A stretch of DNA of 64,000 nt, from the NCBI GenBank assembly GCA_002269645.1, contig NIVC01000301.1, positions 1 through 64,000 of the forward strand. The letters run 5' to 3'. Source of the stretch: Macrostomum lignano. Taxonomy: Eukaryota. Under the pieces are notes generated by a model that ran no database searches, had not been told where the DNA came from, and saw only the letters and a program-made list of their open reading frames with translations. Shown in pieces: positions 37,045 to 49,000 of this stretch (position 1 is the first letter of the stretch; each line of letters starts with the position of its first letter). The position numbers and the translations under genes are program-made.

Positions 37045-40000
37045 ACTCCACCGGAAGCTGCGGACGAGCTCGCCAAGCCAAGTCAGCCGCAGCAGCGAGG
37101 ACCTGGCGGCAACTGCAGTGGCTTCGTCAGCGCGCGCAGCCGCCGGGCCAAGGAGGCCGCGGAGACGGCGATTCGAGACGGCCGCGTGTTTTCCGTCAGC
37201 GGGCCGTACCCCTGGATCCGCGAGTTCCTGCGCCGCCGCGGCTGGGTGGAGAAGCTGCTGCCCAGGCAGGCTGGTCCGGGCGGCGCCCGACGGCGAAGGC
37301 GTCGACGAGCTGCCGCCGCTGTTGACGAAGTCGACGACGATGACGAAGATGACGTCATCGACGATGGCGATGGCGCGGTCGAAGGCGGTGAAATCGATGA
37401 AGAGAATCGGCCGACTGAGGATGACAAGGGAATTCACGGCCTCATGGTGAGCCCGCAACCGCGTCTGTCTGTCTGTCTGTCTGTCTGTCTGTCTGTCTGT
37501 CTGTCTGTCTGTCTGTCTGTCTGTCTGTCTGTCTGTCTGTCTGTCTGTCTGTCTGTCTGTCTGTCTACTACGTAACGCGTAGATTCTGCAGGGTTTTCAG
37601 AATTCTGACGCAAAAAACGCAAATTATACTACTATCTGAAAATGAAGTAAGTAGTATACAAAAACGCTATCCTAAGCGTGATGTGGCAATATGTAGTCGT
37701 AATAATCCATGTGCTCATATTAATTCCATGTACATTAATCCCTATCTATCTCAAATTGTACATTAATTCCATGTACATTAATCCATATCTCAAATTGTCT
37801 ATCCCCAATTCTATATGTACACTCACATTAATCTACAGTGTCATCCCCAGACGTCCCGCGAGCACCAACATTACATGTACAATGCTACATGTACAGTTGT
37901 ACAATCTCATCTACTACTGCCAAATGAGTCAACTAATTGTATAGCTAACATCGTAATGTATATTTCCAATGTACATTCTCAGAGACAGATTTGAATAATA
38001 CGGGTCGGAGTCTATATGTACATCGATAGCCTCTATACTCATATCCGCTACATACCCCAAAAATTAGGTATGTACATTTTCACCCTCGGAGAATGTAGGT
38101 TTGAATATGCTGATAATTTATTCGAAATCACTTATAAAATACACATATTTTCATATAGAGGCGGGCCTGTACAAACTCTCGCCAAGCGATGGGGTGGAGG
38201 TTGCGTCATCCAAGCCTCTCCCCAAGTCAGACCCCAAATGCAGGACTGTGTTGAAGCAGTGCTTTATATTTCTATTGACGGTGGGTATGATACAAGACGC
38301 TTCGTAGCGCTTTAATTACAGTAAACCATCCCCTCGAAGCTCCTATACTGAATGCTGAATCACCCTTTAACTCGGACCATAGTCAAATTCAACCCTGTTC
38401 GAAAACAGCCACCCCTCCGATGTTCACCAGACTCGTCTTCACAGCGCAGACCCCATAGCAAAATCGAGCTAAATTTTAACACTCGCCCCTGTTTTCTCTG
38501 TCCCCCCTTCTAAATGCCAAGGAATTTTGACCCTCTCTCCATTTTCAGTGTACAGACAGATCTTTCCACAGCACAGACCCTATATTAAACTTCATTCAGC
38601 AAAACCCCTCTCTTCTCCGATTACGTCATCCATGCCGCCCAGATAGCAAGAAACCAACTTTTAATGCACACATCAACCCCCGCGAGCAAATCCGAGTCCG
38701 CCAACCTCTACCTGCATTGACAAACCCCAGCTGCATTTGTAAATGTACACAGCCTATGAATCAGTGTCTCCACCGCATGCAATTCTGATTTACTTGATTC
38801 TAAACTTTGTAAATAGTATAAGTCACCCTTGCGTTTACTAGAAGTAGTGAAGTCCACATATTTAAATACGTGAGGCTATTCAATTCTGCCTCTCCGCCTC
38901 CCCTACCTTCTCACTTCAAGCTTTCAGACTTGGTCATTGAGACGGTCGGTTTAATCTGTTAGAAGCAGGAATGAATCATGCACTGACCTCTCCATACAAA
39001 GTAAAGTTGGAATTTCAGACAAGAAATTTGGTTATTTTGAAAGCTAAATGACTAGAAATGCACATTTTTTTCATTAAAATGCAGCTTTTCACAGTTTTTT
39101 TTACGATTTTAACCTTAAAATGCAGACTTTGTTGATCAAAATCAGTAGTTTCATCACTAGAAACCATACTTTCAACAGCTAATTTGTCCAAATATCGCTT
39201 TCAATTTGACCTTAGACTGCTTTTAAGCAGGAATGAACCCCACACAAACATCCACAAGCCAGCCCAAAATCATCCAAAGACATGGCTATTGAAGCCTAAA
39301 TTGCTAGAAATGCGCATTTTTTCATAAGAAAATACAAATTTTCACAGTTTTTATGCATTTTTACGTTAAAATGCAGACTTTATTGATCAAAATCAGTAAT
39401 TCATCACTAGAAACCATACTTTCAGCAACTAATTTGTCCAAATATCGCTTTCAACTTGACCTTAGACAGCTTTTAAGCAGGAATGAACCCCCCACGAACA
39501 TACACAAGCTAGCCCAAAATCATCCAAAGACGGCTGTTGAAGACTAAATTGCTAGAAATGAGCATTTTTTCATAAGAAAACACAAATTTTCACAGTTTTT
39601 ACGCATTTTTTTCGTTAAAATGCAGACTTTATTGATCAAAATCAGTAATTCATCACTAAAAACCACAATTTTAACACAAAATTATCACAAATGCTACTTC
39701 TGGAACTCTGAGACAGCTTTGAGCAGGAATTATAATCGCACACGGATTACCCGAGCCAGTCCAATATTCCACTGAAGCCAGGGTTTTTTAAAGCTGAATT
39801 TTAGAATTGCTCATTCTTTCGTTTAATAAATGACAATTTTCACAGTTTTATTATTTTCTAACGTTAAAATGCGAAATGTATTGGTCAAACTTAGTAGTTT
39901 CATCCCAAAAGCCATAATTTCAACCGCTAATTTGTCCAAATGCTGATTTCAAAGTTGGCAAGAGACAGCTTTCGAGCAGGAATGAGTCACACACTGATCT

Positions 40001-46000: not shown

Positions 46001-49000
46001 CTCGGATTTGCTCGCGGGGTTGATGTGTGCATTAAAAGTTGGTTTCTTGCTATCTGGGCGGCATGGATGACGTAATCGGAGAAGAGAGGGGTTTTGCTGA
46101 ATGAAGTTTAATATAGGGTCTGTGCTGTGGAAAGATCTGTCTGTACACTGAAAATGGAGAGAGGGTCAAAATTCCTTGGCATTTAGAAGGGGGACAGAGA
46201 AAACAGGGGCGAGTGTTAAAATTTAGCTCGATTTTGCTATGGGGTCTGCGCTGTGAAGACGAGTCTGGTGAACATCGGAGGGGTGGCTGTTTTCGAACAG
46301 GGTTGAATTTGACTATGGTCCGAGTTAAAGGGTGATTCAGCATTCAGTATAGGAGCTTCGAGGGGATGGTTTACTGTAATTAAAGCGCTACGAAGCGTCT
46401 TGTATCATACCCACCGTCAATAGAAATATAAAGCACTGCTTCAACACAGTCCTGCATTTGGGGTCTGACTTGGGGAGAGGCTTGGATGACGCAACCTCCA
46501 CCCCATCGCTTGGCGAGAGTTTGTACAGGCCCGCCTCTATATGAAAATATGTGTATTTTATAAGTGATTTCGAATAAATTATCAGCATATTCAAACCTAC
46601 ATTCTCCGAGGGTGAAAATGTACATACCTAATTTTTGGGGTATGTAGCGGATATGAGTATAGAGGCTATCGATGTACATATAGACTCCGACCCGTATTAT
46701 TCAAATCTGTCTCTGAGAATGTACATTGGAAATATACATTACGATGTTAGCTATACAATTAGTTGACTCATTTGGCAGTAGTAGATGAGATTGTACAACT
46801 GTACATGTAGCATTGAACATGTAATGTTGGTGCTCGCGGGACGTCTGGGGATGACACTGTAGATTAATGTGAGTGTACATATAGAATTGGGGATAGACAA
46901 TTTGAGATATGGATTAATGTACATGGAATTAATGTACAATTTGAGATAGATAGGGATTAATGTACATGGAATTAATATGAGCACATGGATTATTACGACT
47001 ACATATTGCCACATCACGCTTAGGATAGCGTTTTTGTATACTACTTACTTCATTTTCAGATAGTAGTATAATTTGCGTTTTTTGCGTCAGAATTCTGAAA
47101 ACCCTGCAGAATCTACGCGTTACGTAGTCTGTCTGTCTGTCTGTCTGCCTGCCTGTCTGTCTGTCTGTCTGTCTGTCTGTCTGTCTGTCAGACTGATTTT
47201 CAAACTAACCCAGTTCCAAGCACCTCGCTGCCACCCGTAGTCGCACATGATCAAGAACACGGAGCCCACGCTGATCTGGACGCTGCACCTGAGCCAGGTG
47301 AACTACCAGGGCCTGCGCCGGGACCAGCTGCTGAACCATTTCGCGCGGGCCGGCTGCCTCACCACCAAGTCGGGCCTCTGCCAGTCGCTTCGCCAGTTGC
47401 CATGGTTCGAGTCCGGGACCTCCGATAGCTTCTTTCCACGCTGCTATGTGCTCAGCTCTGACGAGGACCGGGCCGAGTTCGTGGGTGAGCAACTCATGGC
47501 ATCCAGTGCGCATGACCTGCTCAGGGCTTGGCGGAATGGACAGCTTTAAGTCACAGGTTGCTTTAGCAATAGAAAATGAGTTCTAGGAACTCTCCTGTGT
47601 GCATGCTTACAGCTTGTAGCTGGGAGGGGGTCGCAACTCGCACCTTAGATTACTAACCAGGGTCAACATTGCTTAACTTGTAGCACTGAGCGCAGATTTT
47701 GGTCAAACATAACGCAATAATTATTCGCGATCGCAACTCGAAAATCCGTTCATCCAGATGATTTTCGGCAGACGGCCTGCATGTCACTGCTCCGCCTGGT
47801 TGGCGAGGCTGGGGTTCACGACGTGGCGCACGAACCCGGCACCACTGACTTGCAGGCCTCGCCAGTGAAATCCGGCGCCAAAGGCGGAAAAAAGAAAAGT
47901 GAGTGTGAGATAAAAGATTTTCATTCCTGACTCAGGCATGCTTCATTTTAATTTTAGCATCCCCAATTTCGACTTGCTAGTCACGCCGAATATCCAGTTC
48001 GATAATCCCGATGCCGTTGGCGAGTCGCCGGTGCCGCGATCGGTGCTGGAGACCGCCATCAAGCAGTGCGAGCGACTGCTGCGGTTCAAAAATCACGACG
48101 ATTTAGACGGCTGGGACAGCAGCGTGAGTGACTGGCCGGTGCGGTGTAGGAATAGAGAGCTGCGCTGATTGGCTGGTGCGGGACTGGGGTAGGGAATCGA
48201 GAGCGGCTCTGATTGGCTCGCGCGGGACTGGGGTAGGAATAGAGAGCTGCGCTGATTGGCTGGTGGGGACTGATATAGTAATAGAGTCGCGCTGATTGGC
48301 TGGCGCGGGACTGGGGTAGGAATAGAGAGCTGCGCTGACTGGCTGGTGCGGGACTGGGGTAGGGAATCGAGAGCGGCTCTGATTGGCTCGCACGGGACTG
48401 GGGTAGGAATAGAGAGCTGCGCTGATTGGCTGGTGGGGGACTGATATAGTAGTAGAGTCGCGCTGATTGCCTGGTGTGGGACTGGGGTAGGGAATAGAGC
48501 TGCGCTGACTGGCTGGTGCGGGACTGGGGTAGGGATAGAGAGCCGCTCTGATTGGCTGATGCGGGACTGGGGTGGTAATGAAGAGCCATTCAATTTAGCA
48601 ACTATATTTGTTATTTCCTTCTACTTTCTGTATTTCAGCAGGGAGTTCTGAAACACACTGAGTGGAACGCATTTCTTCAGTCCTATTACCGAGTGGCGCA
48701 GTAAGGACTTCAGCCTTACATTTTGCCGTTCCTGACACCTGTCAGCTGTTCCTGACACGGGTAAGCTTTTTCTGACACGGGTCTGCTTCTTCTCCCCCCT
48801 CAGCCGCGGTTGTCAAATTGCCGACTGCGACTCCGGCGTGCGCAGCCGCTGCCGAGACCTCTGCCAGCGGCTCCGGGTCGAGTTTCCCCAATTCGACATC
48901 GACGGGTGTCGCAGCGTCTGGCTGCTGAAGCCGGGCGGCAGGTCGCGCGGCCGCGGCATCGCCTGCGTCAGCACACTAGAGGCGGTCGAGGCCGCCCTCT

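What the first reader, a model, noticed from the sequence alone, without database searches (positions are those of the whole stretch)
37567..47128. 9.56-kb near-perfect palindromic foldback element inside a tubulin glycylase intron
Seen: two ~4.7-kb arms that are reverse complements (mirror ORFs sum to 84695-84697), with only scattered differences (one substitution at 37879/46816, homopolymer length differences). The spacer is only ~100 bp and is itself hairpin-like. No transposase is present, and the TTLL3 reading frame resumes normally after the insert. Known: foldback elements (Drosophila FB, Galileo, foldback MULEs) have long modular TIRs, and giant short-spacer palindromes are normally unstable. 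Inference: a very recent insertion or actively homogenised copy of an unclassified non-autonomous foldback family whose ACTACG...CGTAGT termini fit no superfamily signature I recognise.
Basis: partly seen in the sequence, partly recalled or inferred. Interest (0 to 1): 0.85.

Follow-up and report, generated by a model that had tools for sequence, protein, structure and literature searches.

The report
Giant hairpin-shaped insert in flatworm gene intron
One of the three copies of the tubulin glycylase gene TTLL3 in the flatworm Macrostomum lignano has a 9.56-kb non-coding insert in an intron that reads almost identically on both strands; it is most likely a recently inserted foldback-type transposon, a known kind of element, but I could not test whether it has other copies.

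Summary
Arms 37567-42313 and 42385-47128 are reverse complements. They differ by one substitution and three 1-nt C-run length differences, around a 71-nt GC-rich imperfect hairpin.

The window is the first 64 kb of scaffold NIVC01000301.1 of the Macrostomum lignano Mlig_3_7 assembly (PacBio CLR, Canu, Pilon). The other two homeologous TTLL3 loci in that assembly carry an empty site. Their intron is about 300 nt, almost entirely a (TCTG)n microsatellite, and they contain nothing like the arm. So the palindrome is a foreign insertion into that microsatellite. It is not a local duplication, and it is younger than the subgenome split.

Several features fit a non-autonomous foldback-type DNA transposon:
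- no coding capacity in the arms;
- modular internal repeats;
- a dense subterminal cluster of TGTACA motifs;
- precisely symmetrical ends.

The centre looks like a snap-back priming site.

Three things remain untested: copy number in the genome, the target-site duplication (masked by the microsatellite) and the transposase. A simple long-read foldback artefact does not fit the geometry, but only raw reads can exclude a partial one.

Verdict: probably a new member of a known kind, of moderate interest.

The parts
37448..47240 (+). Host intron of the TTLL3 homeolog (GT at 37448, AG at 47239-47240). It is 9793 nt here and about 300-326 nt in the two other homeologs.
   Evidence: Exon translations and splice sites. 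The annotated protein P0242 reads GIHGLM|SHMIKNTEP across it. Empty introns are seen in L001 and L002.
37463..37566 (+). Left flank: (GTCT)26 microsatellite, the 5' part of the target.
   Evidence: Tandem Repeats Finder; sequence.
37567..42313 (+). Left arm, 4747 nt, non-coding, about 40% GC, with C>G skew.
37567..37611 (+). Terminal 45 nt, ACTACGTAACGCGTAGATTCTGCAGGGTTTTCAGAATTCTGACGC. It is dense in short palindromes (TACGTA, ACGCGT, CTGCAG, GAATTC; a 12-nt palindrome TCAGAATTCTGA). It is mirrored at 47084-47128.
37729..38173 (.). Subterminal cluster of 11 (A)TGTACA motifs (arm positions 163-607), mirrored at 46522-46966. These are candidate transposase-binding sites.
   Evidence: 11 copies in about 440 nt, against 13 in the 54,438 nt of the window outside the palindrome.
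38964..40192 (+). Array of about five diverged 250-nt tandem units inside the arm, mirrored at about 44503-45731.
38402..38677 (+). Module A copy 1. The other copies are at 40373-40776 and 41032-41445, about 73-74% alike. All carry the motifs GACTCGTCTTCACAGCACAGACC, GATTACGTCATCC and AGCAAGAAAC. All are mirrored in the right arm.
42314..42384 (+). Centre: a GC-rich imperfect hairpin. An imperfect inverted repeat of about 25 nt (GGCGGCAGCAGCGGGCGGAGG / CCTCCGCCCGCGCCGCC) flanks an 8-bp stem GACTGTGC/GCACAGTC with a 3-nt loop. It holds a sixth, unpaired copy of the arm motif CAGCACAG(A/T)CC in left-arm orientation.
   Evidence: No significant similarity to the SMRTbell adapter.
42385..47128 (-). 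Right arm, 4744 nt, the reverse complement of the left arm.
47129..47189 (+). Right flank: the continuation of the same microsatellite in direct orientation, (CTGT)4 (CTGC)2 (CTGT)n. The (CCTG)2 landmark is also seen in homeolog L001.

Best explanation
The insert is a non-autonomous foldback-type (very long TIR) DNA transposon copy. It consists of one 4.8-kb non-coding modular unit, X, and its mirror image. It inserted as a unit into the (TCTG)n microsatellite that makes up a small intron of one of the three TTLL3 homeologs of Macrostomum lignano. This happened after the subgenomes diverged.

Shown:
- it is a foreign insertion with an empty site in both other homeologs;
- its ends are exactly symmetrical;
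- its body is non-coding and modular;
- the host intron is annotated as spliced.

Inferred:
- A transposase supplied in trans recognises the terminal roughly 45 nt and the subterminal TGTACA arrays present at both ends, then cuts and pastes the whole hairpin-shaped unit.
- The palindrome itself arose once, by snap-back (foldback-primed) synthesis at the short imperfect inverted repeat now at the centre. That turned a one-ended fragment into an element with two identical ends. This would explain why the arms are identical right up to an imperfect centre.
- When the intron is transcribed, the RNA should fold into a 4.7-kb duplex.
For: - Palindrome anatomy.
- Window identity: the window is NIVC01000301.1:1-64000 of Mlig_3_7.
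- Empty sites: homeologs L001 and L002 are collinear with the window on both sides. They jump from window 37563/37566 to 47127 across only 68-92 nt of microsatellite. Their introns are gtgagcccgcaaccgcg-(TCTG)n-...ccaag, with no trace of the arm.
- Foreign origin: the arm has no similarity to L001, L002 or the rest of the window.
- Age: arms differ by 1 substitution in 4745 nt (0.02%), against 1.6-2.3% mismatches in the flanks compared with L002. The published subgenome SNP divergence is 1.9-2.4% (PMC10733133).
- TE-like features: an 11-copy TGTACA cluster at 160-600 nt from each end; a 250-nt tandem array and three dispersed modules; no ORF or domain. This matches the architecture described for FB-like families such as Tm1 (PMC3169594).
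- Centre: an imperfect natural inverted repeat with an unpaired copy of an arm motif. This is what snap-back priming leaves behind. Short inverted repeats are known to drive large palindromic duplications (PMC7999016).
- Splicing: annotated across the insert.
Against: - No second copy was seen. The only other M. lignano sequence that could be examined was 52 kb of homeologs.
- No target-site duplication can be demonstrated, because the target is a microsatellite. The canonical 9-bp FB duplication is not an exact repeat here; only 2, 6, 10, 14 or 18 bp are possible.
- No transposase is known for it, and the termini match no superfamily signature.
- The TGTACA cluster partly overlaps a short 43-nt tandem repeat, so it may be less independent than 11 counts suggest.
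- The assembly is an old PacBio CLR draft. Three of the four arm differences are of homopolymer-error type.
Confidence: 0.5

Rival explanations
1. It is not a transposon. A linear palindromic DNA was made by snap-back synthesis or by replication of a hairpin-capped fragment of some other genomic region. It was then captured by end-joining at a double-strand break in the fragile (TCTG)n microsatellite. The symmetrical ends follow automatically from unfolding a hairpin molecule, with no transposase involved.
For: - The centre has exactly the anatomy expected of snap-back priming at a short imperfect inverted repeat. The arms are perfect from that repeat outward (mechanism reviewed in PMC7999016).
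- No TSD is demonstrable, no other copy was seen and there is no transposase.
- The termini fit no superfamily.
Against: - It needs two rare events, plus a source locus that is not near the site.
- The subterminal TGTACA array and the modular repeat architecture are typical of transposon ends rather than of a random fragment.
- An in-situ version, with snap-back during repair at this break, would have copied the left microsatellite in inverted orientation as (AGAC)n at the right junction. That is not seen.
Confidence: 0.2
2. It is an assembly artefact, in whole or in part. The true allele has either no insert or a long-TIR element with a different interior. A palindromic PacBio CLR read (missed adapter or foldback chimera), or a collapse between the two arms, produced the near-perfect palindrome in the Canu/Pilon consensus.
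For: - The assembly was built from RS II CLR reads with Canu 1.4 and polished with Pilon (PMC5730564).
- 36% of its length lies in subgenome-chimeric scaffolds, and 93% of read pairs map to multiple loci (PMC10733133).
- Foldback reads are a recognised long-read artefact (PMC12870357).
- Three of the four arm differences are 1-nt homopolymer lengths, the typical residual error.
Against: - A foldback read mirrors its flank as well. Here the right arm is followed by the microsatellite in direct orientation and by the next TTLL3 exon, not by (AGAC)n and the mirrored upstream exon.
- The junction CGTAGT|CTGT cannot be made from a read of a non-palindromic insert, so at least long inverted termini must be real.
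- The centre is not the SMRTbell adapter (local alignment score 10; shuffled controls mean 7, maximum 12). It is a natural-looking GC-rich hairpin that shares a motif with the arms.
- There are no Ns in the window.
- No other large perfect palindrome occurs in 116 kb of this assembly.
Confidence: 0.15
3. It is an old foldback insertion whose arms are kept identical by continuing arm-to-arm gene conversion, as in the large palindromes of sex chromosomes. It is not a very recent event.
For: Arm identity of 99.98% contrasts with the diverged centre. The internal modules within one arm are only 72-78% alike, so the sequence itself is old.
Against: The insert is absent from both other homeologs, so it cannot predate the subgenome split (about 2% divergence). 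Conversion is not needed to explain one substitution in 4.7 kb if the insert is young. The sharp boundary between the perfect arms and the imperfect centre is explained more simply by snap-back origin.
Confidence: 0.1

Closest known systems
Drosophila Foldback (FB) elements and FB-like families such as Tm1 of Meloidogyne (Mutator/Phantom-associated)
   Same: The element is almost entirely two long inverted repeats. The repeats are modular with internal tandem subrepeats. Most copies are non-coding and mobilised in trans. Tm1 is defined by composite TIRs and 8-10-bp TSDs (PMC3169594).
   Different: - The arms here are 4.7 kb and 99.98% identical, whereas Tm1 TIRs average 93%.
- The subrepeats are 250 nt, not 10-31 nt (Drosophila figures from my own knowledge).
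- A 9-bp TSD is not an exact repeat here; 10 bp would be.
- No MULE or Phantom transposase has been linked to it.
- The family is unproven.
Galileo / Kepler / Newton (P-superfamily foldback-like elements of Drosophila)
   Same: Long TIRs of up to about 1.2 kb with internal tandem repeats, and many non-autonomous copies (PMC4168063 listed; details from my own knowledge).
   Different: A 7-8-bp TSD is not compatible with an exact repeat here. There is no P-type transposase, and the arms are about four times longer.
Snap-back (foldback-primed) palindromic duplications at DNA breaks in yeast and mammalian cells
   Same: Perfect arms start at a short imperfect natural inverted repeat with a small loop at the centre (PMC7999016; PMC7467729 and PMC10622511 listed).
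   Different: Those events duplicate local chromosomal sequence and usually yield dicentric or terminal rearrangements. Here the duplicated sequence is foreign to the locus, and both original flanks are intact.
Mu killer of maize and animal hairpin-RNA (hpRNA) loci
   Same: A transcribed inverted duplication of transposon sequence that would fold into long double-stranded RNA. Here it is a 4.7-kb stem inside an expressed gene's intron. This comparison rests on my own knowledge and is an analogy only.
   Different: No small-RNA or silencing evidence was available. It is not known whether related target elements exist.
Long-read foldback or missed-adapter chimeric reads
   Same: [quoted passage not shown]
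   Different: The flanks are not mirrored, there is no adapter at the centre, and the palindrome sits between two consecutive exons.

Membership tests
Foldback-type (FB-like) DNA elements, structural class | The element consists mostly of two long terminal inverted repeats with little or no unique interior. | tested here: met
   Arms of 4747 and 4744 nt with a 71-nt centre.
Foldback-type (FB-like) DNA elements, structural class | TIRs are composite or modular, with internal tandem or dispersed subrepeats. | tested here: met
   A 250-nt tandem array of about 5 units, three 300-400-nt modules and 43-nt subterminal repeats.
Foldback-type (FB-like) DNA elements, structural class | Target-site duplication flanks the element (9 bp in FB; 8-10 bp in Tm1). 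| tested here: inconclusive
   The target is a (TCTG)n microsatellite. Exact direct repeats are possible only at 2, 6, 10, 14 or 18 bp. Nine bp is not exact, and 10 bp is.
Foldback-type (FB-like) DNA elements, structural class | Insertion polymorphism or an empty site shows that the unit moved as a whole. | tested here: met
   Both other homeologs lack it precisely.
Foldback-type (FB-like) DNA elements, structural class | Multiple copies in the genome share the termini. | not testable with these tools
   There is no access to the M. lignano genome beyond three TTLL3 loci. None was found in 116 kb. There were 0 hits in metagenome, viral, plasmid and phage collections. A search with an arm ORF returned nothing.
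Mutator / Phantom (MULE) superfamily | A MULE transposase in autonomous relatives, and a 9-11-bp TSD. | tested here: inconclusive
   No transposase lies in or near the element. A 10-bp repeat is possible, but it cannot be told apart from the microsatellite period.
P superfamily (Galileo-like) | A 7-8-bp TSD and a P/THAP transposase in autonomous copies. | tested here: not met
   Repeats of 7 and 8 bp are not exact at the junctions, though microsatellite slippage could hide one. There is no transposase.
piggyBac | A TTAA target duplication and CCC...GGG termini. | tested here: not met
   The junctions read GTCT|ACTACG...CGTAGT|CTGT. A degenerate piggyBac-like element does lie elsewhere in the window, but it shares no sequence with the arm.
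hAT / Tc1-mariner / CACTA (CMC) | hAT: 8-bp TSD with YARNG termini. Tc1-mariner: TA TSD. CACTA: CACTA termini with a 2-3-bp TSD. | tested here: not met
   The termini are ACTACG, preceded by T on the left and by G on the mirrored right, so there is no CACTA or YARNG. The flanks are CT, not TA. An 8-bp repeat is not exact. The signatures are taken from my own knowledge.
Long-read foldback / missed-adapter artefact | The mirror symmetry continues into the flanking sequence, and an adapter or nothing lies at the centre. | tested here: not met
   The flanks are direct-orientation microsatellite and consecutive exons. The centre is not adapter-like. Read-level support is not testable here.
Snap-back (foldback-primed) palindrome | A short natural inverted repeat with a loop at the centre, and arms identical from that repeat outward. 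| tested here: met
Snap-back (foldback-primed) palindrome | The duplicated sequence is the local chromosomal sequence next to the break. | tested here: not met
   The arm is absent from both homeologous loci and from the rest of the window.

The most novel reading that the evidence does not exclude
The element could represent an undescribed group of DNA transposons. Each member would be one long hairpin, created by snap-back copying of a single transposon end. It would target (TCTG)n microsatellites and have termini (ACTACGTAACGCGTAG) and TGTACA binding arrays unlike any named superfamily. Sitting in a transcribed intron, it would also be a natural 4.7-kb hairpin-RNA source that could silence its own relatives.
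Probability: 0.1. Interest if true: 0.65.

Novelty: new member of a known kind. Interest (0 to 1): 0.35.

Why it matters
If real, this is an unusually clean natural case. A 9.5-kb, 99.98%-identical, short-spacer palindrome is tolerated inside an expressed gene of a regenerating animal model, and the exact empty site is preserved in two homeologs.

It would give three things:
- a dated, post-polyploidy transposition event in M. lignano, whose subgenomes differ mainly by indels (PMC10733133);
- a test case for how long palindromes survive in a genome under intense stem-cell proliferation;
- a candidate endogenous hairpin-RNA locus.

If it is an artefact, it flags a class of error to look for in the Mlig_3_7 reference.

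Tried and rejected
**Rejected explanations**
- Local inverted duplication of intron sequence. The homeologous introns are about 300 nt of microsatellite, and the arm has no match in L001, L002 or the window.
- SMRTbell adapter at the centre. The alignment score is no better than shuffled controls.
- Simple foldback chimeric read. The flanks are not mirrored.
- A single arm being a conventional TIR or LTR element. There are no inverted ends within one arm. The direct modules are 74% alike and flank only tandem repeats.
- Head-to-head dimer of a normal TIR transposon. The centre would then repeat the terminal sequence, and it does not.
- A relation to the piggyBac-like element at 59.9-63.5 kb. 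There is no shared sequence and no TTAA.

**Searches that found nothing**
- Hidden coding capacity, RNA genes or tRNAs in the arms. The only Rfam rows were two sub-threshold miRNA-hairpin matches to the centre (E about 0.3), which I take to be chance.
- Vector, plasmid or phage contamination. I checked this because the terminus carries SnaBI, MluI, PstI and EcoRI sites.
- Other copies outside the window: an arm ORF against the protein collection, and the terminal 22-mer in metagenome and viral contigs. These nulls say little, because the collections do not hold this genome.
- Literature on foldback elements in Macrostomum or flatworms.

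
Full report
**1. The observation**

The inverted-repeat search returns four contiguous blocks of 100% complementarity. Together they pair 37567-42313 with 42385-47128. A global alignment of the left arm with the reverse complement of the right arm finds one substitution (37879/46816). 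It also finds three single-C length differences in C5/C6 runs (38502, 38677, 41858), and nothing else outside the centre.

The arms are 4747 and 4744 nt, and the centre is 71 nt (42314-42384). That centre is not a random spacer. As single-stranded DNA, 42296-42402 folds into one imperfect hairpin down to a 3-nt loop (-46.3 kcal/mol, z = -7.7).

The arms have no ORF above 106 codons, no Pfam domain, no Rfam family above chance and no tRNA. The only correction is that the spacer is 71 nt rather than about 100.

**2. Where the window comes from**

A spliced model of the flanking TTL-domain gene hits a Macrostomum lignano protein with E = 0. In the real exons it is nearly identical. That protein's cluster holds three annotated M. 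lignano proteins, and their loci could be fetched.

Locus L003 (NIVC01000301.1:26671-62936) contains the same palindrome, with a coordinate offset of exactly 26670. So the window is the first 64 kb of scaffold NIVC01000301.1 of the Mlig_3_7 assembly (GCA_002269645.1).

That assembly was made from PacBio RS II reads with Canu 1.4, polished with Pilon and scaffolded with SSPACE (PMC5730564). The DV1 line it represents carries three homeologous subgenomes (S, L1, L2). Their SNP divergence is about 2%, and they have very many indels (PMC10733133).

**3. It is an insertion, and the empty site is preserved twice**

L001 (NIVC01000406.1) and L002 (NIVC01003040.1) are collinear with the window over tens of kilobases at 90-97% identity.
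- In L001 the alignment jumps from window 37563 to 47127 across 68 nt.
- In L002 it jumps from 37566 to 47127 across 92 nt.

In both, the intron reads gtgagcccgcaaccgcg-(TCTG)n-...tcagactgattttcaaactaacccagttccaag. It is 299 nt in L001 and 326 nt in L002.

In the window the same intron is 9793 nt (37448-47240). The palindrome splits the microsatellite, with (GTCT)26 on the left. On the right lies (CTGT)4(CTGC)2(CTGT)n in the same orientation. The (CCTG)2 landmark is also present in L001.

The arm has no similarity to L001, L002 or the rest of the window. It is therefore foreign DNA and not a local inverted duplication.

The annotated protein of this locus (P0242) joins ...GIHGLM to SHMIKNTEP... 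exactly as in the two homeologs. The gene model is therefore intact across the insert.

**4. Age**

The arms differ by 1 substitution in 4745 nt (0.02%). The unique flanks differ from L002 by 1.6-2.3% mismatches. The insertion, or the last homogenisation of the arms, is thus about a hundred times younger than the subgenome split. Absence from both homeologs independently places it after that split.

**5. Anatomy of one arm**

From the outside inward, one arm has these parts.
- A terminal 45 nt packed with short palindromes (TACGTA, ACGCGT, CTGCAG, GAATTC). That is four palindromic hexamers in 40 nt, against an arm-wide density of 0.02 per nt.
- A subterminal zone at arm positions 163-607 with 11 copies of TGTACA, mostly as ATGTACA. 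The 54,438 nt of the window outside the palindrome hold only 13.
- A module of about 280-400 nt present three times at 73-74% identity.
- A run of about five diverged 250-nt tandem units between module copies 1 and 2.
- An inner unique 800 nt.

The arm has about 40% GC with C>G skew, unlike the GC-rich exons around it. The motif CAGC(A/G)C(A/G)G(A/T)CC occurs five times per arm and nowhere else in the 64 kb, except for one unpaired copy exactly at the centre, in left-arm orientation.

**6. How the palindrome was probably made**

Identity is perfect from the outer ends inward to 42310/42388. Three zones follow:
- an imperfect inverted repeat of about 25 nt (one mismatch, one indel);
- about 20 nt with no symmetry;
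- an 8-bp stem with a 3-nt loop.

This is the signature left when a 3' end snaps back on a short natural inverted repeat and is extended along its own strand. The primer region keeps its mismatches, and everything synthesised is a perfect copy. Short inverted repeats are documented to drive large palindromic duplications in this way (PMC7999016).

I therefore infer that the unit was once a single 4.8-kb sequence (about 37567-42387) and that the right arm is its snap-back copy. This is inference from anatomy and is not shown.

**7. How it got into the intron**

The two outer ends stop at exactly mirrored bases. They abut one microsatellite in direct orientation, with both unique flanks intact.

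An in-situ snap-back during break repair would have copied the left microsatellite as (AGAC)n at the right junction, and it did not. So a pre-formed palindromic unit was inserted.

The simplest agent is a transposase acting on two identical ends, which makes this a foldback-type non-autonomous element. The subterminal motif array and the modular repeats fit that picture. They resemble FB-like families such as Tm1, which are defined by composite TIRs and 8-10-bp duplications. According to that paper, such families are a structural class served by different transposases (PMC3169594).

The alternative is end-joining capture of an extrachromosomal palindromic fragment. The target-site duplication cannot decide between the two, because in a 4-nt microsatellite only repeats of 2, 6, 10, 14 or 18 bp are exact. 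Ten bp would suit a MULE-type enzyme. The duplications of 9, 8, 7, 5, 4 or 3 bp, TTAA and TA are not seen, although slippage could hide them.

**8. Artefact?**

The assembly is an error-prone-read draft of a triplicated genome. Foldback reads are a known artefact, and three of the four arm differences look like homopolymer errors.

Several points argue against it.
- A foldback or missed-adapter read mirrors its flank, which is not the case here.
- The right junction cannot be produced from a non-palindromic insert.
- The centre does not resemble the SMRTbell adapter (adapter sequence from my own knowledge) and shares a motif with the arms.
- The window has no gaps.
- No other such palindrome occurs in 116 kb of the assembly.

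At least long inverted termini must be real. Only raw reads can confirm the full extent of the symmetry.

**9. What could not be done**

No tool here can search the M. lignano genome, so copy number could not be tested. The indirect attempts returned nothing, but those collections do not contain this genome, so the nulls carry no weight:
- an arm ORF against the protein collection;
- the terminal 22-mer in metagenome and viral contigs;
- the arm against plasmids and phages.

The held literature has nothing on foldback elements in Macrostomum or flatworms.

**10. Verdict**

The foldback-transposon reading is the best explanation (about 0.5). Its rivals are capture of a non-transposon palindrome (about 0.2), partial assembly artefact (about 0.15) and an older insertion homogenised by gene conversion (about 0.1).

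It is probably a new member of a known structural kind. It is notable for its size, its near-perfect symmetry and its microsatellite target, but it is not categorically new. Interest is moderate.

Noticed in passing
window 59943-63480: A second, older inverted-repeat structure. The arms are about 690 nt and 82% alike (59943-60627 / 62813-63480). They enclose frameshifted ORFs (61243-61662, 61364-62047) that match the piggyBac-type transposase domain PF13843 (E about 1e-11 to 1e-12). It looks like a degenerate piggyBac-like element with unusually long inverted repeats, and it is also present in homeolog L001.
   Followed up: partly
window 32285-34704: This segment is 2.4 kb here but only 0.6-1.1 kb in homeologs L001 and L002. 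It contains an ORF fragment with a parvovirus-type phospholipase A2-like domain (32837-33073, PF08398, E = 6e-8). Next to it are integrase-like fragments (about 33297-33868; ...ERFNRTL... seen by eye, with no Pfam hit), followed by a long (GTT)n run at about 34.0-34.3 kb. It is probably a degraded mobile element with an unusual domain pairing.
   Followed up: partly
window 28150-30403: A 24-nt minisatellite of about 2.2 kb creates a spurious 736-codon ORF with no Pfam hit. It has strong GC skew and is shorter in L002.
   Followed up: partly
window 48146-48573: A 43-nt and 170-nt tandem repeat array (about 10 units of 43 nt) lies inside a downstream TTLL3 intron. Its copy number varies between homeologs.
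   Followed up: no
window 37567-37611 and 47084-47128: The terminal 45 nt of the element carry four restriction-type 6-bp palindromes (SnaBI, MluI, PstI, EcoRI sites) and a 12-nt perfect palindrome TCAGAATTCTGA. Folding as single-stranded DNA is not significantly stable (z = -1.0). There is no match to plasmid or phage collections.
   Followed up: yes
window about 51000-52000; protein P0242 residues about 770-787: The annotated C-terminus of this TTLL3 homeolog differs from the other two: ...GGGGARQQGDRSV... against ...[17 protein letters not shown].... This suggests a different 3' exon choice, a frameshift or an annotation difference in the copy that carries the palindrome.
   Followed up: no
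window 1-64000: The window starts at base 1 of scaffold NIVC01000301.1 (Mlig_3_7). Other genes seen are a tektin-like ORF (7082-8089), a cytochrome P450-like ORF (15574-16818, minus strand), a methyltransferase-like ORF (30623-31585) and an EF-hand gene (57852-58340).
   Followed up: partly
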